Source: Octopus sinensis | Lineage: Eukaryota | Length of the DNA stretch: 64,000 bases | Reading direction: 5' to 3' | NCBI RefSeq assembly: GCF_006345805.1 | Contig: NC_043002.1 | Coordinates: forward strand, 12,772,001 to 12,836,000 | In this document: piece by piece, positions 738 to 64,000 of the stretch | Numbering within the stretch: the stretch's first letter is position 1 | How the letters are laid out: each line of letters starts with the position of its first letter | Position numbers and translations under genes: made by a program | The notes under the pieces: generated by a model | What the model was told of the DNA's origin: nothing | What the model saw: the letters and a program-made list of their open reading frames with translations, nothing else | The model's database searches: none

Positions 738-838
738 TAAACATATCTAATGTAATAAATGTGAATGTCGGTGTGTCACGCTTTGTCAAGTTTAATAAAT
801 CCTTTCTACTGCAATGTGCATCGATTGACCTCGATGCA

Positions 839-13156: not shown

Positions 13157-13161
13157 ATAAC

Positions 13162-13227
<66 letters not shown>

Positions 13228-20429: not shown

Positions 20430-20461
<32 letters not shown>

Positions 20462-20945
20462 CTTCTTCTACTCTACCTTCTACCTCTTAACTTTATCACT
20501 AATGCTTTTTAGTATAACACCTACGCAAATTCCATAAACAAACCTTTCAATAGAAATATTCTCCTGAATTGAACTGCAACTGCTAGCCGCCACTGACCAT
20601 TCAAAATACGACCATCAAGGCACTCCCAAATATTTCCACCCCCTCTCCTCATCAACCTCCTCCTTCTTCTACCCTACCAAGAATTCACAATGGCCTCGAA
20701 CAAACAAGTGCAAACAAGGGAGACAAAGAAAGGCAGAATGCCACTTATATTTGAACACTATACAAATATTCCTTTAAAAAAACATTTCTTTTAATTTTTC
20801 TAAATTTAATTATTTAATCGTTACAGTTGAAAAGGTCTCAAAATGACCGAAACCGGTACTGAAATGTTCTTTATAAAAATATTTTAGCATTTTCTATTTT
20901 GACTTGTTTTTCATATATATCAACTCGTGTGTTCCATTTCACCCT
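17540..20945 (+). mobile_element. Penelope-like element (RT + GIY-YIG), 5'-truncated and inactivated, unit B
   Basis: KEADKG, YGIPKIHK, LRPII, AMGT, RYLDDCF, LPFLDI and LIY..QYLGQT..LRKRMALH motifs. Flanked by (T)TATACATAT direct repeats in (TA)n. In-frame TAA in the DVVNL[Y] motif. Confidence 0.92.
20824..20861 (+). ncRNA. Minimal type-I hammerhead ribozyme-like motif in the Penelope 3' end (also 39718-39755, 56429-56466)
   Basis: CAG-TTGAAAA-GGTC-tcaaaat-GACC-GAAA-CCGG-TA-CTG: stem I, core with U3-A8, stem II and palindromic stem III ACCGGT. Confidence 0.65.
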
Positions 20946-20946
20946 T

Positions 20947-21041
<95 letters not shown>

Positions 21042-26504: not shown

Positions 26505-27249
26505 CTGAAGAGAAAATGTTTTAATAAAGTTTTAATGCAAGCGCGATAATTAATTTTGGTCATATCTCGATTTTTAGAAAATGTAGTCACAAGGACCATA
26601 TATTATGAAATAGTATCAAATTATACAATATATACATCAGTTCACATATATACAAATGCAGATATATATTACTTCCGGGTTTCGTAGAGGAAAGACGCGT
26701 TTGCTTTTGCTCTGTGAAAAAAAACAAGAAGATTTGCATAAATCGACGAAATAATCTACTAAAACTAACAAAACGTAGAACTTGTTAACTCATAACGATC
26801 TACTAAAATACATTAATTAAAAATATATTAATTAAAAACGTAATATATTTCGCTTGAAGCCAAATATAATACATTAAAGTTAGTTACGCATGCTAGATTC
26901 TTCGCCGTAAAAGCACGTGGTGGCAAGTCTTTAACTTATCTCCAACCAAATGTAAGAAGGAAAAAGAATTGTTCTCTTTTCTGTTTTGAAAGAAAACTTC
27001 TTCGTACAAGCACGAAGGTTTGGACTGTTCCTTTTACGATAAGTAACGTTTTCATATTTTTGTTTATTATTTTTTATTTTCCTTTAATGTAAGCTAACAT
27101 CTCAGTTACGATTTACGACGCCATCTTTGTTTACATTCTGAGAATAACTTTCTTTCAATTTCTGTTTCGCTTTCAATTTATCTTTCATTTTATCTCTATA
27201 AAACTAATATTTAAAAATTCGTTTCATATGTTTATTTTCATGTAATTTA

Positions 27250-30200: not shown

Positions 30201-31112
30201 GAGGTGGACTCGATCTACAGATGGGCTGAGGATAATAATATGCAGTTTAATGCTGAAAAATTCCAGGCCCTGCGCTACCAGCATCCAAAACTGAATATTA
30301 AACTTACAGGATACACCGGTCCACAGGGAATTTCAATCCCAGAGCCTAAGTCTGTGAGGGACCTAGGAATCGACCTGAGAGATGATATCTCTTTCCAAGT
30401 GCACATTACCAGGATGACGACAAAGTGCAGAAGACTGGCTGGATAGAACCTAAGAACATTCAGAACCAGAGATGAGGAAACAATGATGGCCCTCTGGCGG
30501 ACATTCGTCCTCAGCCGCCTGGATTACTGCTCACAGCTATGATCACCCACCAGCTTAAAATTACAGCTGTCCTTGAAGCAATCCAGAGACGATTCACAAA
30601 GAAGATTGTCTCTTTGGAACAGCTCAGCTACTGGGAAAGCTTGAATCAGCTAAGACTCTACTCCCTGGAGAGAAAACGGGAGAGGTGTGCAGTAATATAC
30701 GTCTGGAAGATCCTGGAAGGTATTGTGCCAAATTTTGGCATTGTAAGCTACACCAATACTAGAATGGGACGACACTGCATACTGCCAAAGATCCCAGCAA
30801 TGCCATCACGCTTCAGGACCAGCTTCTGCAACAGCCTGGGTTTCAAGGGCCCACAGCTTTTTAATATTCTGCCAAAGAGTCTGAGGAACTTGCACAAAGT
30901 AGATGTATCGGTCTTTAAATCAAAGCTGGACATCTTCCTGTCGAGAGTCCCAGATAACCCTACCTCACGGCAAGAGGTGCAAATGAGAGTAGCTATGTCA
31001 AACTCCATTCTTTACCAAGTGCCACATATTAGAGGGGGTTCTTCGTAATAACAGTGTAGCACAAAACGGCGGTGCATCAGCATGGCCGCAGCTCTGAGCT
31101 GAAACAAGCAAC
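27250..31112 (+). mobile_element. CR1-type LINE, decayed, unit B
   Basis: ORFs 27370-28020 (ORF1, CCCH), 28032-28946 (APE) and 29295-30446 (RT). Shares the RRLAG* stop with copy A. Confidence 0.9.
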
Positions 31113-36404: not shown

Positions 36405-39293
36405 TTTCGTTCCAACAACCGGTTAAACAACCATGCACAAGAAACCCACACCACTCGCAATGATTACCAACGAAGGCCTCCTAGAACACCACACCCGAAT
36501 ATGGGATATCGGGACGCTCTTGTCAATACTGTTCCAAGAACACACACCATAAATCACAACAGGAGACCCAACATCAACAAAGAACAACTATATAATAGCT
36601 ACCGTCCCAACCACCGCATTCATTTTTTAGACCCAATACGCAAACACAGAGACAGAAGATAGCACCAAACAAGCAGGAGGAACCAAAAGTGATAAAAATT
36701 ATCAATCTAAGTCACAAGGAACTAACAGCAAACCAAATAAACATACTTTCCAAAGGACTCAAGTTTACACCCACCCCACAACACCCCAACTACAATGAAA
36801 TGAAAGAAGACATCGCAGAATTCTGCAGAAAATTAAGACTTACTGAAGAGCTATACGACAAATACAACGAGGACGAATCGTTAGTCAGAAATAGGAGTAA
36901 CTACACCCCCTCTAAAGGTAAGAACAAAACACTTGATGATTTCTGTGACTACATATCAAATTACCCATATCAACATATGCACAAACAAAAACACAAATCA
37001 AATTTCAGCAAAAAAGAATGGGCTGAGTTGAACAAATTAAAACAAGATGAAACAATAACAATCAAAGAGGCCGATAAAGGGAGTGCTGTTGTCTTAATGG
37101 ATACGACATTTTACATAACTTTGGTACTATCTATGCTGGAAGACACAACATACTATGAAAAGGCACAAAACTACAGTCAACAAAAAATAATGAGGGAACT
37201 AAAATCCATGTTAAACCCATACAAAGAAGGGCTCACCGACAAAGAATATGATTATATGACCAATTTCACAAGTAAAACCAGCCAATTCTACGGTATACCT
37301 AAGATACACAAAAGTGAGAAAATAAGTAACGCATGCAAGATAGCTACAGACAAAATAATTAAAGTCCCTAATCCTAATGACCCCAAATTGAGACCCATAA
37401 TAGCAGGTCCCGCATGCGAAACCCACCGCCTCAGTAACTTTTTAGACACCCTGTTAAAACCACTCCTCAAACATGTCAAAAGCTATATAAGGGACGACTT
37501 GGATATGCTCAATCACCTACCGAATACTATAAACAAAAACACCATACTGGTATCCTTCGATGTAGTCAACCTCTAATCCAATATCCCCCACAACCTAGGA
37601 CTAGAGGCAATCCAATTCTGGCTAGAGAATCACGCCAACGAACTCCCACATCGGATCAAAAAAGAATTCGTGTTTGAAGGGGTTAAATTCATCCTGGAAA
37701 ATAACTTCTTCGCCTTCAAAGACAACTTCTACCGGCAAAAATAGGGGACTGCGATGGGTACACGAATAGCCCCCTTCTTTGCCAACCTAGTCATAGGATA
37801 TCTAGAGATCAGTCTGTATCGTAATGTTCTAGAAATATATGGCAGCCCTTTCTCCATCTACATAGAAAACAACTGGAAGAGATATCTAGATGACTGTTTC
37901 ATTCTTTGGCATAAAAATATAGAAAAACTCAAAGAATTTCAAGAAATTGTAAACGGACTGGACGTAAACATCCAATTCACGATGGAATATAGCCAGCAAC
38001 AACTCCCCTTCCTCGATATCCTCATTAAGAAAGCTAATAATGTAATAGAAACAGACATATATTATAAGCCTACAGATTCTAAGCAATATCTTCCATTCAA
38101 TTCATGCCACCCCAGATACACCAGGATGAATATCCCCTTCAATCTAGCAAAAAGGATATGCACTATAGTTTCTAATGCAAACACCAGAGACACACGACTA
38201 CAAGAACTAAAAGATACCCTTATCACCAGGAACTACCCACCTTCACTTATTGACATGTGCATTCAACGTGCCCTTCAACTTAACATCAAGGAACTGAGAC
38301 ATCCAAAATCAAAGAAAAACTTACGACCAAAAGCCTTACCATACATCTCCACACACAACCCTCTCAATAATGAAGCCTTCGGCACCATCCTCCACAACAT
38401 ACCCCTCCTAAAAAAAGACCTCAGAATGAACACAATCCTCCAAACACACACGATCATAAAAAGCAAGAGACAGCCTAAATCTATGAAAAGTCTCATAACA
38501 CAAACCCGAATACACTCTTCAACACAGAAGCCGACAGTAAAAAAATGAGAAGATCCAATTACGGGATATGCGATTATCTAATTGAGGGATCAGAGTTCTC
38601 CTTCAAACAGGGACAACGGTTTACAGTGAAAAGCAACTTCACATGTGCTTCGGAGAACCTGATATACACACTAACCTGCTCTGGGAGTCAAGAGCAGTAC
38701 TTAGGCCAAACAAAAAATAGTTTGCGTAAAAGAATGGCCCTGCACAGACACCAGATAAAAATTCCCCAAAACAGAAAAATAGCTTTCAGCCAATACATAG
38801 ATACTTGCGCCAACAACAAAACACCAGGCTTCAGGATTCCACCCCCCCTACCAATTTAGGGACGATACAACCTCGAGACAACGAATAAGTAAAGAAACTC
38901 TCTTTACTACAAAATACAGGCCACTACTTAACGGGTCTACGACAAACGATTAATATACCTCAACTTTAGAATAACAGAAATATACACACACAAATATTAC
39001 ATTCCAAAGAATCCATTACAAATCAGCCCCAATCACAGCTATAATCCATAACGTGCCAACTTCAAGTCATACAACACCTCACTACATTCACTCATTCATA
39101 TTCTCCCTTCTCGTTTTTCTTCTTCTTCCTCTTCTTCATCATCATCATCATTATCATCATCATCGTCGTCATCATCATCACCATCATCATCATCTTCTTC
39201 TTCTCCTTCTTCTTCTTCTTCTTCTTCTTCTTCTTCTTCTTCTTCTTCTTCTTCTTCTTCTTCTTCTTCTTCATCATCATCATCAACATCATC

Positions 39294-39325
<32 letters not shown>

Positions 39326-39840
39326 CTTCTTCTTCTTCTTCTTCTTCTTCTTCTTCTTCTTCTACTCCACCTTCTACCTCTTAACTTTATCACTAATGCT
39401 TTTTAGTATAACACCTACGCAAATTCCATAAACAAATCTTTCAATAGAAATATTCTCCTGAATTGAACTGCAACTGCTAGCCGCCACTGACCATTCAAAA
39501 TACGACCATCAAGGCACTCCCAAATATTTCCACCCCCTCTCCTCATCAACCTCCTCCTTCTTCTACCCTACCAAGAATTCACAATGGCCTCGAACAAACA
39601 AGTGCAAACAAGGGAGACAAAGAAAGGCAGAATGCCACTTATATTTGAACACTATACAAATATTCCTTTAAAAAAACATTTCTTTTAATTTTTCTAAATT
39701 TAATTATTTAATCGTTACAGTTGAAAAGGTCTCAAAATGACCGAAACCGGTACTGAAATGTTCTTTATAAAAATATTTTAGCATTTTCTATTTTGACTTG
39801 TTTTTTCATATATATCAACTCGTGTGTTCCATTTCACCCT
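36405..39840 (+). mobile_element. Penelope-like element, unit C
   Basis: ORFs 36689-37576, 37754-38548 and 38545-38859. Same termini and stop as B. Confidence 0.92.
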
Positions 39841-39841
39841 T

Positions 39842-39934
<93 letters not shown>

Positions 39935-42612: not shown

Positions 42613-45206
42613 TATTTGTAATCTCCCCACTTTATCGTATGGTTAACACCGAATAGATTTCTTGTGTATCCTAGTCAAGTACCATATTCATGTGAATTCA
42701 ATAGAACTCATTTGAATCTTAAGTTCTTAAACCGTATATATATATATATATATATATAAACTATCACTTCGTCGGTTGCGACGATCAGAGTTCCAGCTAA
42801 TCCAAACGATGTCCTTATCGTGAAATTACCGTTGCTGAGCACTCCATAAACATGCATACACTTATCTTAGTTTCTTTGAATGAATATCTTAAAAGGAAAC
42901 TCTCTAAGAAATCCCATCATATTCATACATACACATCTGTGCTAACTACATCCCCAAGGATGGAGCCTTGTATCTTTGCTGAAAACCGGCTCCCTCCTCA
43001 GTGGAAGATTTATAATCATTAGAAAATTGAAGATACACGCACTTGCTATTGGTTAGCTCCCCTGATCTGTATATTTATTTCGAAATCCTGCGTAACCTTG
43101 CGTTGTTTCGTGTCTTCTCAAACAAAACGGACGTTATTACCAGTTTCATTATTTATCCATAAATAAATGATATTTATTCACCAATGCAATGTTGAGTATT
43201 CATTCTCAGATTTCGATACTAACGTCTATATATATGTAAGTGTGTGTGTGTGTGTGTATGTGTGTGGAGGTTCAATGGCCCAGTGGTTAAGGCAGCGGTC
43301 GTGAGGTCGCGGTTTCGATTCCCAGACCGGGCATTGTCAGTGTTTATTGAGCGGAAACACCTAAAGCTCCACGAGGCTCCAACAGGGAGTGGTGGCCGAT
43401 CCTGCTGTACTCTTTCACCATTACTTTCTCTCACTCTTTCTTCTGTGTTTCTGTTGTACTTGTATTTCAAAGGGTCAGCCTTGTGACACACTGTGTCACG
43501 CTGAATCTGCACGAGAACTTCGTTCAGGACACACAGCCACTTACACGTTACTTTTCCGAGCAGGCTGTTCCGTTGATCGGATAAACTGGAACCCTTGTCG
43601 TAGTAACCGATGGAGTGCCACGACGTGTGTGTGTGTGTGTGTGTGTTTGTTAGTTTGTTTGCACCTCCGTGACCTAGCGGTTCGGCTAAAAGACTAATAG
43701 GAAAAGCATCAAACTTAAGTCGAAGTTTTTGACGAAAATCCCTTGAAGGCGCTGACCCACCATAGTCGCAGCCCAATGACTGAAAGCAGTGTTATAGAAC
43801 TTACCAGCTGTAATCAAAAAGTATCCAACTTTTTTTTATTTTGCACAAAATAACAAAGCGTGAGCAAAATCTGCATGGGTATACGCAAAGATTTCCCCCT
43901 GCAGTGATGTGTTGGGTACAGCCTTGAAGTGTGCTGTGAGATTGTTAAAGTCAAATTTAAAAAAAATATTACTTGCTTTTTGGCCAAAGTTCGGATAATT
44001 TTTGTCTACACCTAGTATTTGTAAATTTATTGGAATTTATAAATATTATGCACTAAAATGTTTCAGAATTCAAAAATTAAAGAAATGGATGAAAATCAGA
44101 TTTGCAGTTTTAAAGAACTTTATTTTTCACAAAAAAACATTTCTAAAAGTTATTGTATTTCAAGTCTTACTGGTTACAGAAAACAGCCTTGCGATAATTG
44201 CTGATCTTGAAACGCAATTCTGAAATATACAAAATATGAATATATTTATAGATATAAAAAAGATATAAAATTGCTTTAAAAAATCTAGAAGTTAATCTTA
44301 TCTTCCTAAAATAAATCCTTGTAGGTAAAAGACTTAAATTAGAAAATTGCGATCAAGTGTCTATAGTATTTGCATAATTTACTATTTTTCTCTAGCCCTG
44401 GGCACATCGGAACGCTTAATCAATTACCATGGCATATTACTGACGAAGATCACAACATTACATATGAACGTGACTTTGGTCCATCACAGTATATAAGGCC
44501 AGCAATTTCCAATGACGATTGAAGCCGATACCAATAACACCACTTTATATTCATTTCTTTACTGCCAACAAGGGGCAATACACAGAGGGGACAGTCAAGG
44601 ACAAACAAACGGATTAAGTTTATTATATCGACCCCAGCGCGTAACTGGTACTTATGTAATCGACCCCGAAAGGATGAAAGGCAAAGTCGACTTCGGCGGA
44701 ATTTGAACTCAGAACGTAACAGCAGACGAAATACGGCTACGCATTTCACCCGGCGTGCTAACGATTCTGCCAGCTCGACGCCCTACATAATCTTTTCTAC
44801 TATAGGAACAAGGCCTGCAATTTTGTGGAGGGGACTAGTAGATTGCGTGAACCCCAGTATTTCACTGGTACTTATTTTATCGACCACGAAAGGATGAAAG
44901 GGTGAAGTTATACTCGGCGGAATTCGAACCTGAGTATAAACAGCCGGAACAAACAAAGCTAAGCCTTTTATCCGACGCTCTAAAGGGATTGATAACTCAC
45001 CGTTTTAAACGGTTTCAAATTTTGATAGAAGGCGAATCATAGAGGAGTTAATGTTTGTCCAATTTCCATCTCATCTACCAAAAGCATTCTGACAGTTTTA
45101 CTATTACTATGGCCGCTAGGACTCTAGATCTTTCTGTAATGCGATAATTTAGAAATAAACGTGTCAAACGAAATATGATAAAATGAAATATAAAGAAGTT
45201 ACTTAC

Positions 45207-45386
45207 ATTGGTTTTGACAATATGGCGGAGGAATTTCGCTACATCTTTGAGTTTGGGGGTCAAAGAAAAGATTGAATTGACACGGCATGGAAGGGTATGA
45301 GGTACGCTTGAAACAGGGAATATACCTGTGGCAGTCAGCAGGGTCACGGTTCATCCCGTCTGGGTATTGGTTACAGAGAGGATCAT
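45207..45386 (-). CDS. CBM14 gene C exon 2
   Basis: Same splice sites as A. One synonymous change vs A. Confidence 0.92.
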
Positions 45387-45870
45387 CTGAAGAGAAAATG
45401 TTTTAATAAAGTTTTAATGCAAGCGCGATAATTAATTTTGGTCATATCTTGATTTTTAGAAAATGTAGTCACAAGGACCATATATTATGAAATAGTATCA
45501 AATGATACAATATATACATCAGTTCACATATATACAAATGCAGATATATATTACTTCCGGTTTTCGTAGAGGAAAGACGCGTTTGCTTTTGCTCTGTGAA
45601 AAAAAACAAGAAGATTTGCATAAATCGACGAAATAATCTACTAAAACTAACAAAACGTAGAACTTGTTAACTCATAACGATCTACTAAAATACATTAATT
45701 AAAAATATATTAATTAAAAACGTAATATATTTCGCTTGAAGCCAAATATAATACATTAAAGTTAGTTACGCATGCTAGATTCTTCGCCGAAAAAGCACGT
45801 GGTGGCAAGTCTTTAACTTATCTCCAACCAAATGTAAGAAGGAAAAAGAATTGTTCTCTTTTCTGTTTTG

Positions 45871-46122
45871 CTTTTTAATATTCTGCCAAAGAGTCTGAGG
45901 AACTTGCACAAAGTAGATGTATCGGTCTTTAAATCAAAGCTGGACATCTTCCTGTCGAGAGTCCCAGATAACCCTACCTCACGGCAAGAGGTGCAAATGA
46001 GAGTAGCTATGTCAAACTCCATTCTTTACCAAGTGCCACATATTAGAGGGGGTTCTTCGTAATAACAGTGTAGCACAAAACGGCGGTGCATCAGCATGGC
46101 CGCAGCTCTGAGCTGAAACAAG

Positions 46123-46126
<4 letters not shown>
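45871..46126 (+). mobile_element. 3' remnant (~256 bp) of the CR1-type LINE in unit C
   Basis: The junction CTGTTTTG|CTTTTTAATATT joins B-equivalent positions 26988 and 30857. Confidence 0.9.
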
Positions 46127-46192
<66 letters not shown>

Positions 46193-48122
46193 GTAAGGAA
46201 CAAATGTCCTCTTCACCGGTGTAAAAATCACTGAGGCAATTAGAGGTCACCGGAAGAAGAATGTGTCTGCTTTCCGAGTTCTGAAGAGTTCTCCTCCACT
46301 AACCACGCCAAGATGGGAATTGTCCAGGCTAAAGGAATGGACTCTTCAAGGAGAAAAGATGCATATTCCCGCTTCAAACAAGTGCCTCTTGATCAAATGC
46401 CTGCAAAAGTTCGAAGAGTGGTTGTTGATGGCCTTGGAAGAACCAAAAATGACATTGTTGTCAAAGAAGTGAAATCTATATTTGGAGCTAAAAACTTTCA
46501 GGAGATGATACATCGAACCCATGATGTCAAAGTCCGGTTTGAGAAACTTGGTCTCTTCAGATCCATCAAGATAATGGTGGACAACTTGAAAGAAGATTCT
46601 GTTTCTACTGATAACTATGAAGTGACATTTGAGGTTGAAGAACTACGAAGGGTCTCTGGTGGTATCAACACCTTAATTGGTACCAATGATGCAAGTCTTT
46701 TGCTGGGAATGAAATTACCGAACATGTTTGGTCGAGGTGAAAAATCTATATTTGAATATTCTCATGGTACTAAGACTAACCGAGGACAAAATTTCACATT
46801 CTATGCTCCCTTACATGGCAACCCTGACACAATGTTCAGTTCAGGGGTGTACCAGTCCAGTATGGAATATCCCTGGAGTGGTTACGTAGAGACCAGTCGA
46901 GGAACGTCTATTGACTTCACCTTACCTTCATATTTTGGCTCTCATTGCCTGCGTCTTGAAGGAGTCTGGAGAGATTTACGAGCTTTATCACGAACAACTG
47001 CATTTGCTGTCAGAGAGCAAGCCGGACACACGTTAAAATCTTCAATAAAGCATGAATTTGTCAAAGACACAAGAGACGACCCAATAATTCCACGACATGG
47101 TTTCCTGCTGAAAATTATTGACGAATATGCAGGACTTGGTGGTAACGTGGAATATTTGAAAAATGAAATAGAATTTCAGGGGACGAAATCCTTATTCTTT
47201 GATTGTAGTGTACAGATGTCGTTAGCTGGTGGAATGATGAAACCTCTTGCAACTAATAACGAGCTGAAAATCAATGATCGATTTTTCCTTGGAGGACCTT
47301 TGACCCTGAGAGGGTTCACACTAAAAGGAGTTGGACCACACAGTGATGGTAACGCATTAGGTGCTGACACCTACTGGCTGGCAGCGTTACACCTGTATAC
47401 ACCTCTACCCTTCCGTCCTGGAAAAGGCGGCTTTGGAGAACTGTTTAGAACTCACCTGTTTGTAAATGCTGGAAACTTGGCCAACTTGAAGCTCAGTGAT
47501 GGTCCGAGGGGAATATTAAATGGTCTGAAATCAAATTACAGAGTATCATATGGTGGTGGAATTGTCCTTCGGATGGGACGAGTGGCTCGCCTTGAATTGA
47601 ATTATGTTGTGCCCTTACACATATGTCAAGGAGACAGTGTCAACCCTGGTCTTCAGTTTGGCATTGGCTTCGTGTTCTTGTGATACCACTTACCATTCTA
47701 CCATTGTAGTTATATTTCCGGTTGAGTCTGGTCCAGCCCTCTCTCCATCCACCATTGACCGGTGCCGGACATTACTGTATCCAGCCTGTACTGGTCATCC
47801 ACGAACCTTTTGTTTCTGTCCAGTTGGGTATCACACAGTAAAGCTGCAGTTACAAATGGCCGTGAAACTACACAAAACCTCATGGCATTAGTGGAGGGGG
47901 TGGGTGTGGGCTTCAGTGGGGGGTTGGGTGGGGACATCTTTCTAAAAAAACAAAAAAAAAAAAAAGACATTAAATTTAAAGCTGTCCTTAAATGTAACTT
48001 TTGACAATCTTTTACCAAAGAGTGAAACCGGTTAGGTAAATAAACATCGTTTAAATTGCATTTTCAAACCTTTTTTCTTATATAATCCCACTCGTGCGAT
48101 ACCCCACAACTCAACTTTTTTT
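46193..48122 (+). other. ~1.93 kb insertion into the (TA)n tract of unit C: 5' leader, SAMM50 ORF, 260 nt GC-rich segment, A7CA14, Penelope-like tail
   Basis: The flanking (CA)/(TA) tract matches the uninterrupted tract at 31113-31265 in unit B. Confidence 0.9.
46313..47683 (+). CDS. SAMM50: Sorting and assembly machinery component 50 (Omp85 family), intact intronless 456 aa ORF; probable retrocopy
   Basis: MG N-terminus, POTRA-like VVVDGLGRTK, INDRFFLGGPLTLRGF, LHLYTPLPF, GRVARLELNY and C-terminal LQFGIGFVFL. No introns or stops. GCCAAGATGG context. Present only in unit C. Confidence 0.95.
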   Translation: MGIVQAKGMDSSRRKDAYSRFKQVPLDQMPAKVRRVVVDGLGRTKNDIVVKEVKSIFGAKNFQEMIHRTHDVKVRFEKLGLFRSIKIMVDNLKEDSVSTDNYEVTFEVEELRRVSGGINTLIGTNDASLLLGMKLPNMFGRGEKSIFEYSHGTKTNRGQNFTFYAPLHGNPDTMFSSGVYQSSMEYPWSGYVETSRGTSIDFTLPSYFGSHCLRLEGVWRDLRALSRTTAFAVREQAGHTLKSSIKHEFVKDTRDDPIIPRHGFLLKIIDEYAGLGGNVEYLKNEIEFQGTKSLFFDCSVQMSLAGGMMKPLATNNELKINDRFFLGGPLTLRGFTLKGVGPHSDGNALGADTYWLAALHLYTPLPFRPGKGGFGELFRTHLFVNAGNLANLKLSDGPRGILNGLKSNYRVSYGGGIVLRMGRVARLELNYVVPLHICQGDSVNPGLQFGIGFVFL

Positions 48123-48177
<55 letters not shown>

Positions 48178-48406
48178 GTATTTATATATATGTATATATA
48201 TATACAGGGAGAGAGAGAGAGAGAGAGAGATCGTTAGCTACTACACACATTTATTTCTCTCTATGTTTTTTTTCTATGTCCCTTTCTGAATAAGAGCGTA
48301 GGCTCGAAACGTAAAACACTTTTTCTTTTCCTGAGTGTTATACTAATACATCTGTTTGTTTGTACATGACCTGTCTTCGTCTTTTGTTTTTTTCGTAAAC
48401 TCTCGT

Positions 48407-48449
<43 letters not shown>

Positions 48450-48773
48450 TGATGATAATAATACTAATAATAAGCAACCATACTCTGGGATATGCCGATA
48501 CACACAGATAGAGAAATTAAGGCCAACAGACCAGATATAGTTGTCAGAGATCATGAAGAAACAAAATGCTTTCTAATTGATGTATCAATACCGGCTGATG
48601 ACAACGTGTCTCTAAAAGAAATGGAGAATCTCTCAAAATACAAAGACCTGGAAATAGAGGTAACTAGAATGTGGAATCTGAAAACAGAAACAATTCCTAT
48701 CATAGTAGGTGCATTAGGCATGATAAAAAAATATTAGTGAAAGCACGCAATAAAAATAAAACTACTGAATAAC

Positions 48774-48827
<54 letters not shown>

Positions 48828-49062
48828 TAGTGCTCATGGGAACTGCTCATATTCTACGCAAAATACTTGTTATGTAATCTCAACTTTTAAAACAAACAAC
48901 TTTCGTATGGTTTTTAGGCATTCACTAGTACAACACTAAGTACAAAACCAAAAATACGGAACCCTAGGCATAACACCACCACGAACTTCCAACATGTTGT
49001 CTGTTGAGGTCTCTGGGTAGGAATTAGAGCCTGCTTGTGCAAATGTAAAGCAAAAGTCAAAC

Positions 49063-49127
<65 letters not shown>

Positions 49128-49185
49128 TTAATAATAATAATAATAATCATAATAATAATAATAATAATAATATAATTATAACTTG

Positions 49186-49245
<60 letters not shown>

Positions 49246-49487
49246 GATAGTGCTCATGGGAACTGCACATATCCTACGCAAAATTCTTGTTATGTAATCT
49301 TAAGTTTTAAAACAAACAACTTTCGTATGGTTTTTTTAGGCATTCACTAGTACAACACAAAGTACAAAACCAAATATATGGAACCCTAGGCATAACACCA
49401 ACACGAACTTCCAACTTGTTGTCTCTTGAGGTCTCTGGGTAAGAATTGGAGCCAGCTTGTGCAAATGTAAAGCAAAAGTCAAACATA

Positions 49488-49558
<71 letters not shown>

Positions 49559-49812
49559 TATAAATGCACCCTTTTAAAGCCTAGCAAGACTCATGGGCCT
49601 GGTTACCCGGTTTCTGTGGCGTATGTGTTCCCCAGCTGGATGGGACGCCAGTCCATCGCAGCGTTACTCATTTTTGCCAGCTTAGTGGACTGGAGCAACG
49701 TGAAATGAAGTGTTTTGCTCAAGAACAGAACGCGACGCCCGGTCCAGGAATCGAAACCACAATCTTACGATCATGATGCTGACACCCTGAACACTAAGCC
49801 ATGCGCTTCCAT

Positions 49813-49858
<46 letters not shown>

Positions 49859-49884
49859 GCTACTACTAATACTACTACTACTAC

Positions 49885-49930
<46 letters not shown>

Positions 49931-51366
49931 TATAATAATAATAACCCTTTCTACTATAGGCACAGAGCCTGGAATGTTGGGAGAGGGGTCCAGTCGATTA
50001 GACTGACCCCAGTACACAACTGGTACTTACTTTCTCGACCCCGAAAGGATGAAAGGCTTAGTCGACCTCGGCGGAATTTGAACTCAGAATGGATGAAATT
50101 CCACTTCGCATTTTGCCCGGCGTGCTGACAGGATCTAGGATACATCACCCAAAATCAAACATACAAAGGCTTATATACAACGTATAGAAGGTGGTAGAGG
50201 CCTTATACAATTGGAAAACTACTATAAAATAGCCACCATAGGACTGCAAAAATATCTACTTCAGAAGGAAGGAAAACTGATACAAATAGCGGCAAAACAC
50301 GAGCAAAACAAAAAACAGTTTTCAGTATTTAAGGAAGGTGACAAATACAAACAAGATATCATACCACCTAACAAATATGAAAAAGAAGAAGATGAAGAAA
50401 CAACAAAAGCTATAAAACAAATGAAATCCAAACTTAAAGTAGAACAGCAACGAACCATGATAAAATGAATGGCAAGAAAAGCCCCTTCATGGCAAATACT
50501 GGACTAAACTAAATGAAAAAGAAATAGACAAAGAAAAGTCCCAGCAAATGTTGAGAAGCTCAGAACTCAAAGCAGAGACAGAGGGATTTTTAATTGCAAC
50601 ACAAGACCAAAGCCTCCCCAACAGAAATTACCAAAAACATATAATGAAAAGAAATAAAACAAGTAACTGCAGAATGTGTGGAGATGGGCAAGAAACAATA
50701 AATCATATTATCTTTGGCTGCCCAGTCCTGGCTAAGAAGGAATATATAATCACAGACACGACAGAGTTGGGACCTATATACACTGGAAGCTATGCCAACA
50801 TTATGGAATAACAACAGAAAAAAGATGGTATAGGCACACACCAGTAAAGGTCACAGAAAACGAGAAAGCAACCATACTCTGGGATATGCCAATACACACA
50901 GATAGAGAAATTAAGGCCAACAGACCAGATATAGTTGTCAGAGATCATGAAGAAAAAAATGCTTTCTAATTGTTGTGTCAATACCAGCAGATGACAACGT
51001 ATCTCTAAAAGAAATGGAGAAACTTTCAAAATACAAAGACCTGGAAATAGAGGTAACCTGAATGTGGAATCTAAAACAGAAACAATACCTATCATAACAG
51101 GTGCATTAGGCATGATAAAAAATATAGCAAAAACACCAGGACTTACAAACACATATATATACAGAAAATTGCACTACTAGGCACTGCACACATCCTACGC
51201 AGAACACTTTCAATACAGTAACCATCAGCGCACCACAAATCACAGCACATACCCAAGGCACACGGAGCTGCGCTCGGTAGTGAAGTGAAAGCATGCTATA
51301 AAAATATAATTACTGAGTTATAATAATAATAGCAATAATGATAAATATATAGATAAAGAAACTTAC

Positions 51367-51643
51367 CGAATCTTCCTCCATAAACTGGTTTGTCGCAGTC
51401 ATCATATTGGCTGTTCCGCCACACACAGACTTGTTGAGATTGAGAAAACACAGTTTGGTTACCACATGCCAACGGTATGGGAAACATAGCATTACATAAG
51501 TAGAATTCACTGCAGTTACTTGGGGATCGGACAAAATGTGATCCGGCTCTAACTTGTGTCTGCTGACACAGAGTCATGATACTCTGACTGTAGACTGTTG
51601 ACACTGCGATCAAGAGAATGGCGGCCACAAAACGGAACTCCAT
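51367..51643 (-). CDS. CBM14 gene C exon 1
   Basis: Same coding sequence and donor as gene A exon 1. Confidence 0.9.
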
Positions 51644-52106
51644 TGTTGTAATTTTATCAATTATAGAATCGAACGAGAGTTAAGACGAATGGCTTGCAAA
51701 AACGCTATCACAACAGACTAGTAACCTCTGTAAATGTGTCTCAGATCCCTAACAGTGAGCTTCTTATATAGGCCTTAAATAGGGTTAGGGTGAGGTTTTG
51801 AATAAGAATTAGGTAGTAATTCTGGTTCTTTTTTTGAAATTGATCTAATATTTGGTCTTCCTTCTTCATGCTAACAAGCCTCCGCCCAACGACCGTATTA
51901 GATAACTAGTTTATCTGTGTTGTCATTGTTATAGTTGTTGACGTTGTTGTTGTTCTCCTCCCCCTTCTGCTCCGCCTTCTCCCCACCTGCAGATTAGTTA
52001 TCAGTTATGTCAATGGTGATGAAGGAGATGGCCTTAGCGTTTTATTGATAGCTATTATTCTCTTACAATTGACACTACATACATACATATATGCATATGT
52101 ATATAA

Positions 52107-52144
<38 letters not shown>

Positions 52145-52183
52145 AAATATATATATATATATTATATATATATATATATATGT

Positions 52184-52215
<32 letters not shown>

Positions 52216-52593
52216 GAGTGTGTGTATGTATATATAAATATATATATATATAATTATATTAATATAAATGTATATATATACATATATATATTACTATATA
52301 TATATATGCCTGTAAGTATTTATATACATATCTGCTTATATATATGCATGTAAATATTTATATATATGTATATATATAAATATATGTATATATATATATG
52401 CCTGTAAGTATTTATATACATATCTGCTTATATATATGCATGTAAATATTTATATATATGTATATATATAAATATATGTATATAAATAAATAAATCTATG
52501 TAAATATATACACATATACATAGATATGTATATACACACATGCACACACACACACGCACACACACGCACGCACACACACACACACACACACAC

Positions 52594-52640
<47 letters not shown>

Positions 52641-53079
52641 CACACACACGCACGTATAAAATAGACTTTAATTGAAGTACAATTTCACCGAAATTAAACA
52701 TATTTAATGTAATAAATGTGAATGTCAGTGTGTCACGCTTTTCCAACTTTAATAAATCTTTTCTACTGCAAGTACATGGACTCATATTTTTCGAAAAGGA
52801 TTAAGTTTATTCCATCAACCCCAATGCGTAACTGGTACTTTAATCGATCCCTAAAGGATGAACGGCAAAGATGACCTCGGTGGATTTCGAACGCAAAACC
52901 TAACGGCAGCCCGCTGGCTAAGCGAGCAGGCCAACAGCAGAAAGAGTGGGAGAAAGAGTGGTGAAAGATTACAGCAAGGACCACCGCCCTCTGCCGGAGC
53001 CTCGTGGAGTCCGCTGCCCTAACCACTAGGCCATTGCGCCTCCACACACACACACACACACACACACACGCGTATATAG

Positions 53080-53131
<52 letters not shown>

Positions 53132-56100
53132 TTCGTTCCAACAACCGGTTAAACAACCATGCACAAGAAACCCACACCACTCGCAATGATTACCAGGGAA
53201 GGCCTCCTAGAACACCACACCCGAATATGGGATATCGGGACGCTCTTGTCTATACTGTTCCAAGAACACACACCTAAATCACAACAGGAGACCACACATC
53301 AACAAAGAACAACTATATAATAGCTACCGTCCCAACCACCGCATTCATTTTTTAGACCCAATACGCAAACACAGAGACACAAGATAGCACCAAACAAGCA
53401 GGAGGAACCAAAAGTGATAAAAATTATCAATCTAATTCACAAGGAACTAACAGCAAATCAAATAAACATACTTTCCAAAGGACTCAAGTTTACACCCACC
53501 CCACAACACCCCAACTACAATGAAATGAAAGAAGACATCACAGAATTCTGCAGAAAATTAAGACTTACTGAAGAGCTATACGACAAATACAACGAGGACG
53601 AATCGTTAGTCAGAAATAGGAGTAACTACACCCCCTCTAAAGGTAAGAACAAAACACTTGATGATTTCTGTGACCACATATCAAATTACCCATATCAACA
53701 TATGCACAAACAAAAACACAAACCAAACTTCAGCAAAAAAGAATGGGCTGAGTTGAACAAATTAAAACAAGATGAAACAATAACAATCAAAGAGGCCGAT
53801 AAAGGGAGTGCTGTTGTCTTAATGGATACGACATTTTACATAACTTTGGTACTATCTATGCTGGAAGACACAACATACTATGAAAAGGCACAAAACTACA
53901 GTCAACAAAAAATAATGAGGGAACTAAAATCCATGTTAAACCCATACAAAGAAGGGCTCACCGACAAAGAATATGATTATATGACCAATTTCACAAGTAA
54001 AACCAGCCAATTCTACGGTATACCTAAGATACACAAAAGTGAGAAAATAAGTAACGCATGCAAGATAGCTACAGACAAAATAATTAAAGTCCCTAATCCT
54101 AATGACCTCAAATTGAGACCCATAATAGCAGGTCCCGCATGCGAAACCCACCGCCTCAGTAACTTTTTAGACACCCTGTTAAAACCACTCCTCAAACATG
54201 TCAAAAGCTATATAAGGGACGACTTGGATATGCTCAATCACCTACCGAATACTATAAACAAAACACCATACTGGTATCCTTCGATGTAGTCAACCTCTAA
54301 TCCAATATCCCCCACAACCTAGGACTAGAGGCAATCCAATTCTGGCTAGAGAATCACGCCAACGAACTCCCACATCGGATCAAAAAAGAATTCGTGATAG
54401 AAGGGGTTAAATTCATCCTGGAAAATAATTTCTTCGCCCTCAAAGACAACTTCTACCGGCAAAAATCGGGGACTGCGATGGGTACACGAATAGCCCCCTT
54501 CTTTGCCAACCTAGTCATAGGATATCTAGAGATCAGTCTGTATCGTAATGTTCTAGAAAGATATGGCAGCCCTTTCTCCATCTACATAGAAAACAACTGG
54601 AAGAGATATCTAGATGACTGTTTCATTCTTTGGCATAAAAATATAGAAAAACTCAAAGAATTTCAAGAAATTTTAAACGGACTGGACGTAAACATCCAAT
54701 TCACGATGGAATATAGCCAGCAACAACTCCCCTTCCTCGATATCCTCATTAAGAAAGCTAATAATATAATAGAAACAGACATATATTATAAGCCTACAGA
54801 TTCTAAGCAATATCTTCCATTCAATTCATGCCACCCCAGACACACCAGGATGAATATCCCCTTCAATCTAGCAAAAAGGATATGCACTATAGTTTCTAAT
54901 GCAAACACCAGAGACACACGACTACAAGAACTAAAAGATACCCTTATCACCAGGAACTACCCACCTTCACTTATTGACATGTGCATTCAACGTGCCCTTC
55001 AACTGAACATCAAGGAACTGACACATCCTAAATCAAAGAAAAACTTACGACCAAAAGCCTTACCATACATCTCCACACACAACCCTCTCAATAATGAAGC
55101 CTTCGGCACCATCCTCCACAACATACCCCTCCTAAAAAAAGACCACAGAATGAACACAATCCTCCAAACACACACGATCATAAAAAGCAAGAGACAGCCT
55201 AAATCTATGAATAGTCTCATAACACAAGCCCGAATATACTCTTCAACACAGAAGCCGACAGTAAAAAAATGTGGAAGACCCAATTGTGGGATATGCGATT
55301 ATCTAATTGAGGGATCAGAGTTCTCCTTCAAACAGGGACAACGGTTTACAGTGAAAAGCAACTTCACATGTGCTTCGGAGAACCTGATATACACACTAAC
55401 CTGCTCTGGGTGTCAAGAGCAGTACTTAGGCCAAACAAAAAATAGTTTGCGTAAAAGAATGGCCCTGCACAGATCCCAGATAAAAATTCCCCAAAACAGA
55501 AAAATAGCTTTCAGCCAACACATAGATACTTGCGCCAACAACAAAACACCAAGCTTCAGGATTTTCCCCCTCTACCAATTTAGGGACGATACAACCTCGA
55601 GACAACGAATAAGTAAAGAAACTCTCTTTATTACAAAATACAGGCCACTTCTTAACGGGTCTACGACAAACGATTAATATACCTCAACTTTAGAATAACA
55701 GAAATATACACACACAAATATTACATTCCAAAGAATCCATTACAAATCAGCCCCAATCACAGCTATAATCCATAACGTGCCAACTTCAAGTCATACAACA
55801 CCTCACTACTTTCACTCATTCATATTCTCCCTTCTCGTTTTTCTTCTCCTTCCTCTTCTTCATCATCATCATCATTATCATCATCATCGTCGTCATCATC
55901 ATCACCATCATTATCATCTTCTTCTTCTCCTTCTCCTTTTTCTTCTTCTGATTCTTCTCCTTCTTCTTCTTCTTCATCATCATCATCATCATCAACATCG
56001 TCATCTTCTTCTTCTTCTTCTTCTTCTTCTTCTTCTTCTTCTTCTTCTTCTTCTTCTTCTTCTTCTTCTTCTTCTTCTTCTTCTGCTCCACCTTCTACCT

Positions 56101-56550
56101 CTTAACTTTATCACTAATGCTTTTTAGTATAACACCTACGCAAATTCCATAAACAAACCTTTCAATAGAAATATTCTCCTGAATTGAACTGCAACTGCTA
56201 GCCGCCACTGATCATTCAAAATACGACCATCAAGGCACTCCCAAATATTTCCACCCACTCTCCTCATCAGCCTCCTTCTTCTTCTACCCTACCAAGAATT
56301 CACAACACAAAAGTGCAAACAAGGGAGACAAAGAAAGGCAGAATGCAACTTATATTTGAACACGAAACAAATATTCCTTTAAAAAAACTTTTCTTTTAAT
56401 TTTTCTAAATTTAATTATTTAATAGTTACAGTTGAAAAGGTTTCAAAATGACCGAAACCGGTACTGAAATGTTCTTTATAAAATTATTTTAGCATTTTCT
56501 ATTTTGACTTGATTTTTCATAATTATCAACTCGTGTGTTCCTTTTACCCT
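53132..56550 (+). mobile_element. Penelope-like element, unit D (least decayed C-terminal half)
   Basis: ORFs 53414-54289 and 54394-55677 (427 aa, RT through GIY-YIG, with CGRPNCGIC). Confidence 0.92.
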
Positions 56551-56551
56551 T

Positions 56552-56634
<83 letters not shown>

Positions 56635-62802: not shown

Positions 62803-63549
62803 CTGAAGAGAAAATGTTTTAATAAAGTTTTAATGCAAGCGCGATAATTAATTTTGGTCATATCTTGATTTTTAGAAAATGTAGTCACAAGGACCATATA
62901 TTATGAAATAGTATCAAATTATACAATATATACATCAGTTCACATATATACAAATGCAGATATATATTACTTCCGGGTTTCGTAGAGGAAAGACGCGTTT
63001 GCTTTTGCTCTGTGAAAAAAAACAAGAAGATTTGCATAAATCGACGAAATAATCTACTAAAACTAACAAAACGTAGAACTTGTTAACTCATAACGATCTA
63101 CTAAAATACATTAATTAAAAATATATTAATTAAAAACGTAATATATTTCGCTTGAAGCCAAATATAATACATTAAAGTTAGTTACGCATGCTAGATTCTT
63201 CGCCGTAAAAGCACGTGGTGGCAAGTCTTTAACTTATCTCCAACCAAATGTAAGAAGGAAAAAGAATTGTTCTCTTTTCTGTTTTGAAAGAAAACTTCTT
63301 CGTACAAGCACGAAGGTTTGGACTGTTCCTTTTACGATAAGTAACGTTTTCATATTTTTGTTTATTATTTTTTATTTTCCTTTAATGTAAGCTAACATCT
63401 CAGTTACGATTTACGACGCCATCTTTGTTTACATTCTGAGAATAACTTTCTTTCAATTTCTGTTTCGCTTTCAATTTATCTTTCATTTTATCTCTATAAA
63501 ACTAATATTTAAAAATTCGTTTCATATGTTTATTTTCATGTAATTTAAG

Positions 63550-64000
63550 CTTACGACTGAGAAATATAAGAGCATGGACAATTGCTAGTGGTGATCCGCC
63601 GAGCAACATCATCGCTGCCGCGCTAAACAACAATGGATTTCATAGAACCATTGACCAAATAGAGCGAATGAAAGGAGAATTTATCCGGTCTTACATGCTT
63701 GTAAGACCACACATCAAAACATTGGATAACATAATTGAAAAGTATTGTGGCAAGGCTGATGGGGATGAAGAGAACGAAAAGGAGAAGGAAGCCGGAAGTC
63801 TGTGTGATCCAGGAGTTCCTCAGGAAAATGGATCACCTACCTCGGTGACCGACCAGGTAGTGAAGGATAGGGCAGCCAAGCGAGCAGAAACCGGAAGCCC
63901 CCCTGTAGCAGTGGTCCAACAAAGAAATGAGAAATTAGAAAAACAGAAGGAAAAAGGAAGGACCGAAAACAAAAATAAGGAGGGAAAGGGAAGAAAAGGA
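63550..64000 (+). mobile_element. CR1-type LINE ORF1 start, unit D (partial)
   Basis: Matches 27250-27700. Confidence 0.9.

What the first reader, a model, noticed from the sequence alone, without database searches (positions are those of the whole stretch)
46193..48122. SAMM50 retrocopy that ends in a Penelope-like 3' terminus: possible Penelope-mediated host-gene retroposition
SEEN: an intact, intronless SAMM50 ORF sits in a (TA)n tract that is uninterrupted in units A and B. It is followed by A7CA14 (47944-47965) and ~160 bp that line up motif by motif with the 3' end of the resident Penelope. TTGACAA (48001) matches TTGAAAA (20827). GAAACCGGT follows at 48024 vs 20849 (23 vs 22 nt later), GCATTTTC at 48058 vs 20887, and TTTTTCTTATATAATCCCACTCGTGCG matches TTTTTCATATATATCAACTCGTGTG just before the (TA)n. 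KNOWN: Penelope-like elements carry hammerhead motifs in their terminal repeats, whereas processed pseudogenes are classically attributed to L1-type LINEs. INFERENCE: a related Penelope family began reverse transcription on its own 3' end, switched template at the A-tract onto a host mRNA and inserted at a TA target. That would be a little-described route to retrogenes in an L1-poor genome. The similarity is short and AT-rich, so chance is not excluded.
Basis: partly seen in the sequence, partly recalled or inferred. Interest (0 to 1): 0.85.

Follow-up and report, generated by a model that had tools for sequence, protein, structure and literature searches.

The report
Octopus SAMM50 retrocopy with Penelope tail
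A very young, intact, intron-free copy of the mitochondrial SAMM50 gene in an octopus genome is fused at its 3' end to the last 137 bases of a Penelope-like retrotransposon and sits in that element's preferred (TA)n target, which points to Penelope machinery rather than an L1-type LINE as the maker of this gene copy.

Summary
Window 46194-48122 is a single 1929-bp insertion found in only one of four ~18.7-kb tandem units. It is flanked by a 20-bp direct repeat, (TA)9TG. Bases 46194-47985 are a full-length spliced copy of the 14-exon SAMM50 gene on another chromosome: the protein is identical and there are 5 substitutions.

The A7CA14 tract is not a poly(A) tail. It is encoded in the parental last exon, and collinearity continues 20 nt beyond it, ending 11 nt after an ATTAAA signal.

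The remaining 137 bp (47986-48122) are absent from the parental locus and its 10-kb flanks. They are a Penelope-like element (PLE) 3' terminus, on three grounds:
- They carry a U3-A8 minimal hammerhead with a palindromic CCGG helix III, the type described for PLE terminal repeats.
- They are homologous to the 3' end of the resident PLE.
- They are 83% identical (E 8e-22) to the (TA)n-abutting end of an inverted truncated PLE copy in Octopus bimaculoides.

Best reading: one target-primed reverse transcription event at (TA)n began on a PLE 3' end and continued on SAMM50 mRNA. The template switch itself is inferred. This is a new variant of known chimeric retroposition. Interest is moderate to high.

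The parts
46174..46193 (.). Upstream copy of the candidate target-site duplication, (TA)9TG
   Evidence: It is identical over 20 nt to 48123-48142. Units A and B have only one TG in this tract.
46194..46312 (+). 5' UTR of the retrocopy (first 119 nt of parental exon 1); the copy starts at the probable transcription start
   Evidence: It is 100% identical to L002 9882-10000, and the parent has unrelated sequence upstream. The transcript contig L001 from a related octopod starts about 6 nt inside this point.
46313..47683 (+). Intact SAMM50 ORF, 456 aa plus stop, with all 13 parental introns removed
   Evidence: Pfam Omp85, E 5e-53. An exact-protein look-up finds the same protein at the 14-exon genes L002 and L003. 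Exon tiling shows GT..AG introns and two synonymous differences, at 46663 and 46771.
47684..47985 (+). SAMM50 3' UTR collinear with the parental last exon; includes the genomically encoded A-tract 47944-47965 and ATTAAA 47969-47974
   Evidence: BLASTN aligns 47635-47985 to L002 29461-29809 (98.3%) and to L003 29412-29761. There are three substitutions (47882, 47914, 47925) plus a change in A-run length.
47986..48122 (+). 5'-truncated 3' terminus of a Penelope-like element (non-parental tail)
   Evidence: There is no match in the parental loci including 10-kb flanks. It is homologous to the resident PLE 3' ends. It is 82.7% identical over 98 nt (E 8e-22) to O. bimaculoides L134 8367-8270(-), the end of an inverted truncated PLE copy abutting (TA)n.
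47997..48037 (+). Minimal hammerhead motif, U3-A8 variant. Helix I is 47997-48000 / 48034-48037. The core UUGACAA is 48001-48007. Helix II is 48009-48013 / 48018-48022. GAAA is 48024-48027. The palindrome CCGG is 48028-48031. The predicted cleavage is after 48033.
   Evidence: Rfam HH9 matches the full model at 17.9 bits, E 0.022, below the gathering score. A descriptor with pairing rules is met here but by 0 of 120 chance matches. Pair counts: 91.7% of cells paired against 68.7% in shuffles, 0/500.
48058..48086 (+). Conserved PLE terminal block GCATTTTCAAACC-T-rich-TATATAAT
   Evidence: It aligns with the ends of PLE 3' regions in L134, L133, L135 and the resident PLE.
48087..48122 (+). 36-nt terminal extension CCCACTCGTGCG...CAACT(7-8) before the (TA)n
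   Evidence: Diverged counterparts exist in the resident PLE and in L135, but not in L134 or L133. It may correspond to the 30-40-bp 'tail' extension described for PLE insertions (PMC8557442). This is unresolved.
48123..48142 (.). Downstream copy of the candidate target-site duplication, (TA)9TG
   Evidence: The T at 48123 could equally be the last T of the T-run.
53132..56555 (+). Resident Penelope-like element, unit C copy (also 17540-20950 in A and 36406-39845 in B), used as the comparison
   Evidence: The RT and C-terminal GIY-YIG footprint is 53426-55677. TA-rich microsatellite lies on both sides. The hammerhead module is at 56418-56485.
45870..46126 (+). Remnant 3' end of a LINE (APE+RT; full length in units A and B), whose trailing (TA)n/(CA)n tract is the insertion target

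Best explanation
The insert is a chimeric retrocopy made in one target-primed reverse transcription event by Penelope-like element (PLE) machinery.

Proposed sequence of events:
1. A PLE endonuclease and reverse transcriptase nicked a (TA)n tract.
2. cDNA synthesis began on the 3' end of a PLE RNA, whose end merges into (UA)n, and copied its last 137 nt, including an uncleaved minimal hammerhead.
3. Synthesis then continued on a spliced SAMM50 mRNA, from at or near its cleavage site (11 nt after ATTAAA) to its 5' end.
4. Integration produced a duplication of up to 20 bp, (TA)9TG.

Shown:
- the structure of the insert;
- its parental origin;
- the PLE identity of the tail;
- the (TA)n target;
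- the flanking repeat;
- the young age of the copy.

Inferred:
- that the reverse transcriptase was PLE-encoded;
- that the two RNAs were joined by a template switch rather than already being one RNA.
For: Retrocopy:
- The exact protein is encoded at a 14-exon gene on another chromosome in the same assembly (L002, CM016874.1) and in O. vulgaris (L003). The intronless copy is on CM016864.1.
- All 13 introns are removed at GT..AG borders. There are five substitutions in 1792 nt.

Single recent event:
- The insert is present in one of four units that differ from each other by 2-5%.
- An exact 20-nt (TA)9TG lies on both sides of the composite, whereas units A and B carry a single TG.
- There is no TA between the SAMM50 part and the tail.

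Tail is not parental:
- It has no match in L002 or L003, including 10 kb downstream.

Tail is a PLE terminus:
- Its best alignments in the window are the three resident PLE 3' ends.
- The resident PLE (RT plus GIY-YIG with a CX4CxxC linker) is bounded by TA tracts on both sides, so that module is its terminus.
- Both the tail and the resident module give full-length Rfam HH9 hits on the + strand.
- Both have the U3-A8 core, a palindromic ACCGGU helix III and an unpaired base at stem II. These are features described for PLE terminal-repeat hammerheads (PMC4209133).
- Helices I and II differ in sequence but stay paired.
- O. bimaculoides L134 8367-8270(-) is 82.7% identical (E 8e-22) and runs into (TA)n. 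It is contiguous with 8951-8733(-), which is 90% identical to the 3' UTR (12949-13163) of an adjacent RT/GIY-YIG element.
- O. vulgaris and O. bimaculoides PLEs (L133, L135) have the same layout: ORF, then a microsatellite-rich UTR, then a U3-A8 hammerhead, then GCATTTTCAAAC, then (TA)n.

Target:
- A (TA)n or other microsatellite insertion bias is published for PLEs (PMC8557442).
Against: - The O. sinensis source element was not found, because no tool searches that genome. The nearest relative of the tail is from another species and is 83% identical.
- The Rfam hits (18-21 bits) are far below the gathering score of 52. HH9 does not hit the L133 or L135 modules.
- L133 entered the alignment through a descriptor that demands pairing, which biases the pair counts.
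- Within a TA tract the duplication rests on a single informative G. That G could instead be an untemplated or cap-derived base.
- The junction has no A-run, which is unexpected for a jump onto a polyadenylated mRNA end.
- Sequence alone cannot show which reverse transcriptase acted. A LINE with a (TA)n-associated end lies immediately upstream.
Confidence: 0.72

Rival explanations
1. A chimeric RNA existed before retroposition. A SAMM50 transcript read through or spliced into a PLE fragment more than 10 kb downstream of the gene, or was otherwise joined to it. Because it carried the PLE 3' recognition module, it was retrotransposed as one RNA without a template switch.
For: The break follows ...AAAGCT|GT, so a GT donor is formally possible. 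The absence of any A-run at the junction fits splicing better than a jump onto a poly(A) tail. PLE terminal sequences are reported to suffice in cis for mobilisation in trans (PMC3846280).
Against: There is no tail-like sequence within 10 kb downstream of the parent in either species. GTACAG is a weak donor. The break lies 11 nt after ATTAAA, with a GU-rich stretch downstream in the parent, which is the expected cleavage site.
Confidence: 0.1
2. Two independent insertions occurred. A 137-bp 5'-truncated PLE copy first landed in unit C's (TA)n, and a SAMM50 cDNA later inserted exactly at its 5' edge.
For: (TA)n tracts are hot spots for PLE insertion, and 5'-truncated PLE copies are common.
Against: No TA or second duplication separates the two parts. 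One (TA)9TG repeat flanks the composite. Units A and B lack both parts. The SAMM50 part has neither a poly(A) tail nor any terminus of its own.
Confidence: 0.05
3. Another enzyme or pathway did the work. Either the neighbouring LINE family (or another reverse transcriptase that primes on TA repeats) used these RNAs, or a double-strand break in the fragile (TA)n captured cDNA fragments by end joining.
For: The insert lies in the (TA)n that trails a LINE with APE and RT domains. There is no poly(A) at the junction.
Against: The insert contains no LINE 3' sequence. Its 3' end is a PLE terminus in the orientation and position expected for priming on (TA)n. The flanking duplication fits staggered nicking. 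End joining would not be expected to place a PLE end precisely against the TA tract.
Confidence: 0.08
4. The resemblance of the tail to PLE ends is chance similarity of AT-rich sequence, and the tail is unrelated filler.
For: The score against the resident PLE alone is only about 2 sd above the shuffle maxima. The Rfam hits are sub-threshold.
Against: The match to the O. bimaculoides PLE end has E 8e-22. The composite motif has an expected count of 0.00. None of 120 chance matches to the motif satisfies the hammerhead pairing rules. There is covariation across five modules.
Confidence: 0.03

Closest known systems
L1 template-switch chimeric retrocopies (U6-L1, U3-L1, mRNA-L1 chimeras; Buzdin and colleagues 2002-2003; cited from my own knowledge, not read here)
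   Same: The 3' part is a 5'-truncated end of the retroelement where reverse transcription began. The 5' part is a complete cellular RNA. One target-site duplication flanks the whole.
   Different: The element here is a PLE (telomerase-like RT plus GIY-YIG nuclease), not an APE-type LINE. The target and primer are (TA)n rather than TTTT/AA with a poly(A) tail, and there is no poly(A) anywhere.
LTR-retrotransposon-mediated retroposition by microsimilarity-dependent template switching (Tan et al. 2016, PMC5131818)
   Same: It is a route to retrocopies in animals independent of L1. The products are chimeras of TE and mRNA with junctions that lack poly(A).
   Different: Those copies are flanked by LTR-element sequence on both sides, are often partial, and are made in virus-like particles with two switches. 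Here there is TE sequence at the 3' side only, the mRNA is full length, and the signature is that of target-primed insertion. Microhomology at the junction is only a possibility (AAAGCT).
Penelope-mediated mobilisation of host genes in Adineta vaga (Arkhipova et al. 2013, PMC3846280)
   Same: PLE terminal sequence is attached to a host gene at a new locus with a target-site duplication. PLE machinery is inferred to act in trans.
   Different: The rotifer cases retain their introns and are framed by pLTRs on both sides, with an inverted copy. The octopus copy is fully spliced and has 137 bp of PLE end at the 3' side only.
Minimal hammerhead ribozymes of PLE terminal repeats, including the U3-A8 core variant (Cervera and de la Pena 2014, PMC4209133); animal non-LTR retrozymes as PLE derivatives (bioRxiv 10.64898/2026.07.22.740005)
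   Same: The shared features are a type-I layout, a short helix I, an unpaired base at the 5' side of helix II, no stable helix III but a 4-nt palindrome (dimer type), U3-A8 covariation, and a location near the PLE end.
   Different: Activity was not tested. The motif here is a single copy attached to an mRNA copy, not a tandem retrozyme. The junction is 48 nt upstream of the predicted cleavage site, so ribozyme cleavage did not define it.

Membership tests
Processed retrocopy of an mRNA | All parental introns are precisely absent | tested here: met
   Fourteen exons tile 46194-47985, and the 13 introns have GT..AG borders in L002 and L003.
Processed retrocopy of an mRNA | The copy lies at a locus unlinked to the parent | tested here: met
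   The parent is on CM016874.1 and the copy on CM016864.1 of the same assembly.
Processed retrocopy of an mRNA | A poly(A) tail at the 3' end | tested here: not met
   The A-tract is encoded in the parental exon. There is no A-run at 47985|47986 or at 48122.
Processed retrocopy of an mRNA | A target-site duplication | tested here: inconclusive
   An exact 20-nt (TA)9TG lies on both sides. Within a TA tract only the G is informative.
3' terminus of a Penelope-like element | A hammerhead motif of the PLE minimal or palindromic-helix-III type | tested here: met
   UUGACAA...GAAA-CCGG-UU with paired helices I and II. The type matches the description in PMC4209133.
3' terminus of a Penelope-like element | Physical continuity with an RT plus GIY-YIG element in relatives | tested here: met
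   The resident PLE is bounded by TA tracts. The inverted truncated copy in L134 is contiguous with the PLE 3' UTR. L133 and L135 carry the module 0.6-0.9 kb after the ORF.
3' terminus of a Penelope-like element | Many genomic copies at element ends in the same genome, including a near-identical source | not testable with these tools
   No search of the O. sinensis genome is available.
3' terminus of a Penelope-like element | Insertion into a microsatellite, especially (TA)n | tested here: met
   The bias is published in PMC8557442.
Hammerhead ribozyme (Rfam RF02275 HH9) | Score at or above the curated gathering threshold | tested here: not met
   17.9 bits for the tail and 18.8-20.9 bits for the resident module, against 52. 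There is no hit for L133 or L135.
Hammerhead ribozyme (Rfam RF02275 HH9) | Conserved catalytic core C3U4G5A6N7G8A9 ... G12A13A14 | tested here: inconclusive
   The core is U3...A8, a covariant pair reported in natural PLE hammerheads. All other core bases are present. The O. bimaculoides relative has G5 changed to C.
Hammerhead ribozyme (Rfam RF02275 HH9) | Self-cleavage | not testable with these tools
   This needs an in vitro assay, probably with dimeric constructs.
Template-switch chimeric retrocopy | A 5'-truncated element 3' end joined to a complete cellular RNA inside one duplication | tested here: met
Template-switch chimeric retrocopy | Microhomology at the junction | tested here: inconclusive
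   AAAGCT is shared with the O. bimaculoides PLE copy just 5' of the start of homology, with 4 extra nt in the retrocopy. TAAATTTAA is shared with the resident PLE. My rough estimate is that each match has a chance probability of about 0.1 or more in AT-rich sequence.
PLE-mobilised host gene of the Adineta vaga type | Introns retained and pLTRs on both sides | tested here: not met
   The introns are removed. The 5' junction is (TA)9TG joined directly to exon 1.

The most novel reading that the evidence does not exclude
Penelope-like elements may be a regular source of processed retrogenes in cephalopods and other L1-poor lophotrochozoans. Their reverse transcriptase would prime on (TA)n with a terminal module of about 140 nt that contains the hammerhead, then jump to the ends of cellular mRNAs. 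This particular product would be a functional young SAMM50 duplicate, since none of its 5 substitutions changes the protein.
Probability: 0.25. Interest if true: 0.75.

Novelty: new variant of a known kind. Interest (0 to 1): 0.6.

Why it matters
Which enzymes make retrogenes outside mammals is largely open. LTR elements have been implicated in flies, fish and birds. PLEs have been implicated only for intron-containing genes in a rotifer.

This locus is a clean, young natural product in which a fully spliced mRNA copy carries a PLE 3' end. It suggests three things:
- About 137 nt of PLE terminus, including the hammerhead module, may be enough for priming and integration at (TA)n.
- A PLE-type reverse transcriptase can continue onto a second RNA.
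- At least one PLE family was recently active in Octopus.

It also gives a simple search key for a genome-wide census of such copies: an intronless gene copy followed by this tail next to (TA)n. In addition, it flags a second, intact SAMM50 gene in O. sinensis.

Tried and rejected
- Rfam at gathering thresholds found nothing in the window.
- ARAGORN found no tRNA or SINE head.
- PLE relatives from TARA and other metagenomes and from Argonauta (L005-L012) have no tail-like 3' ends.
- A weak hit at L002 2535-2618 is not next to a TA tract and was dismissed as chance.
- The metagenome scan with the linear hammerhead pattern returned only chance matches. It served solely as a negative control.
- An Rfam E-value scan of L133-L135 was swamped by false microRNA hits on microsatellites. 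Targeted HH9 scans of the L133 and L135 modules were negative.
- No upstream pLTR or internal repeat was found in the resident PLE.

Ideas rejected:
- The junction is the hammerhead cleavage site. It is 48 nt upstream of that site.
- The G at 46193 is a cap-derived base. It is explained equally well or better as the end of the duplicated (TA)9TG.
- The parent has a TA tract upstream of exon 1. This was an artefact of a multi-record file and was corrected.
- The tail is a parental 3' exon within 10 kb. It is absent there.

It gave O. bimaculoides and O. vulgaris loci but none from O. sinensis.
Full report
**Context.**
- The window is a tandem array of four units of about 18.7 kb (start-to-start spacings 18664, 18882 and 17416). 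The units are 94-98% identical.
- An exact-protein look-up places the window on CM016864.1 of assembly GCA_006345805.1, which I know to be Octopus sinensis.

**The insert.**
- Self-BLAST shows that 46193-48122 exists only in unit C. Its flanks are contiguous in units A and B, inside a (TA)n/(CA)n tract that follows the LINE 3' end.
- The ORF 46313-47683 (456 aa) is SAMM50/Omp85.
- The identical protein is encoded by a 14-exon, 19.5-kb gene on CM016874.1 of the same assembly (L002), and by its O. vulgaris orthologue (L003).
- Bases 46194-47985 tile the 14 exons, with all 13 introns (GT..AG) removed.
- The copy starts at L002 9882, where the parent has unrelated upstream sequence. A transcript contig from a related octopod begins about 6 nt inside that point. 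The copy is therefore full length at its 5' end.
- Only five substitutions separate the copy from both parents: two synonymous and three in the 3' UTR. There is also a change in A-run length.
- For scale, non-coding divergence between the two species at the parental locus is 0.74%. The insertion is much younger than the array. Its age is roughly comparable with the sinensis/vulgaris split.

- The A7CA14 tract (47944-47965) is not a poly(A) tail. The parental last exon encodes A7CAACA9 (A10 in O. vulgaris) at the same place.
- Collinearity continues through GACATTAAATTTAAAGCTGT to 47985.
- The break at 47985|47986 is 11 nt after ATTAAA. In the parent a GU-rich stretch follows, so the break is at or very near the expected mRNA cleavage site. 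There is no A-run at the junction.
- The non-parental tail is 137 bp (47986-48122). It has no match in the parental loci, including 10 kb downstream.

**What the tail is.**
1. Its three best local alignments anywhere in the window are the homologous sites just before the (TA)n that follows each resident PLE. Lenient BLASTN gives E 0.007.
2. The resident PLE is bounded by TA-rich microsatellite on both sides (17540-20950, 36406-39845, 53132-56555). That site is therefore its 3' terminus.
3. Both the tail (47987-48061) and the resident terminus give full-length, + strand Rfam Hammerhead_HH9 hits at 18-21 bits. These are well below the gathering score.
4. Read by hand, both are minimal type-I hammerheads. 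They have a U3-A8 core (UUGANAA), GAAA, a palindromic CCGG in place of helix III, and H17.
5. Helices I and II differ between them but stay paired: ACUU/AGGU and CUUUU/AAGAG in the tail, against CAG/CUG and GGUC/GACC in the resident.
6. This is the hammerhead type described for PLE terminal repeats, including the U3-A8 covariation (PMC4209133).
7. The linear motif occurs only at these four sites in the window, against 0.00 expected. Of 120 chance matches in metagenomes, none satisfies the pairing rules.
8. In O. bimaculoides (L134), 8367-8270(-) is 82.7% identical to the tail (E 8e-22) and runs straight into (TA)n.
9. Upstream on the same strand, 8951-8733 is 90% identical to 12949-13163(+). 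That stretch is the 3' UTR of an adjacent PLE whose RT/GIY-YIG footprint is 9504-11742.
10. This is the published PLE arrangement of an inverted 5'-truncated copy beside the 5' end. The forward copy's own end is lost in an assembly gap (PMC8557442).
11. Two further octopod PLEs (L133 from O. vulgaris, L135 from O. bimaculoides) show the same layout: ORF, microsatellite-rich UTR, U3-A8 hammerhead with a 4-nt palindrome (CAUG, CUAG), a GCATTTTCAAAC block, then (TA)n.
12. On the six-sequence alignment, 91.7% of hammerhead cells pair, against 68.7% in shuffles (0/500). Seven of ten pairs change on both sides.
13. One caveat applies to that count. One sequence was selected by a descriptor that requires pairing.

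**One event.** The composite is flanked by an exact 20-nt (TA)9TG (46174-46193 and 48123-48142), whereas units A and B have a single TG in this tract. No TA separates the SAMM50 part from the tail.

**Mechanism.**
- The most likely mechanism is target-primed reverse transcription at (TA)n by a PLE. Synthesis would start on the PLE RNA 3' end and continue on SAMM50 mRNA.
- The switch itself, and the identity of the enzyme, are inferred.
- Possible microhomology (AAAGCT, TAAATTTAA) cannot be judged without the O. sinensis source element.
- The junction is 48 nt upstream of the predicted ribozyme cleavage site, so ribozyme cleavage did not define it.

**Comparison and novelty.**
- The architecture matches L1 template-switch chimeras (from my own knowledge).
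- It is analogous to LTR-mediated retroposition (PMC5131818).
- PLE mobilisation of host genes is known only for intron-containing genes framed by pLTRs in a rotifer (PMC3846280).
- Full-text searches found no report of a spliced mRNA copy with a PLE tail.
- I rate it a new variant of a known kind.

**Limits.** There is a single example. No genome-wide search was possible. The ribozyme assignment is sub-threshold in Rfam.

Noticed in passing
window 45870 (unit C) versus 8325-12266 (A), 26989-30855 (B), 63287-64000 (D): Unit C lacks about 3.9 kb of the LINE (zf-CCCH ORF1, APE, RT) that is full length in A and B and begins in D. Only its last 323 bp remain. The left breakpoint is exactly where C departs from the other units.
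   Followed up: partly
window about 44218-51643, minus strand (L004 7906-15331): The public annotation has a 152-aa CBM_14 (chitin-binding) gene model spanning the retrocopy on the opposite strand. The SAMM50 copy therefore sits antisense inside that model, presumably in an intron. The array may be a tandem CBM_14 gene family.
   Followed up: no
window 46663, 46771, 47882, 47914, 47925: All five substitutions that distinguish the copy from both parental genes are synonymous or in the UTR. Under neutrality, zero of five being non-synonymous has a probability of about 0.01-0.02 by my rough estimate. This is a weak hint that the ORF is constrained, or that the differences were already in the source allele.
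   Followed up: partly
window 55250-55400 (unit C PLE ORF): The resident PLE nuclease has CGRPNCGIC (CX4CxxC) just upstream of GIY-YIG. This is the linker motif proposed to direct microsatellite targeting in Neptune- and Naiad-type PLEs. The three copies carry different frameshifts.
   Followed up: partly
window 55780-56090 (also 20250-20515 and 39009-39480); L133 11200-11520; L134 11760-12950: Octopod PLE 3' UTRs contain long internal microsatellite or low-complexity stretches between the stop codon and the hammerhead module: (CTT)n/(CAT)n, CTA/CTG-rich, and CA-rich respectively.
   Followed up: no
L134 13166 onward: An assembly gap in O. bimaculoides starts exactly inside the PLE inverted repeat. 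This illustrates how such structures break assemblies and hide PLE ends.
   Followed up: no
window 48123-48200, 52070-53165 and many TA/CA tracts in L133-L135: In E-value mode, Rfam reports mir-297, mir-1277, mir-3149, mir-466 and similar hits on microsatellites. These are artefacts of hairpin-forming repeats, not microRNA genes.
   Followed up: yes
window 328-789, minus strand: A further reverse-transcriptase fragment (RVT_1, E 3.6e-16) lies at the start of the window and is unrelated to the finding.
   Followed up: no
window 17540-17562 (also 36406 and 53132): The 5' end of the resident PLE contains AACCGGTT, the same palindrome core as helix III of its 3' hammerhead.
   Followed up: no
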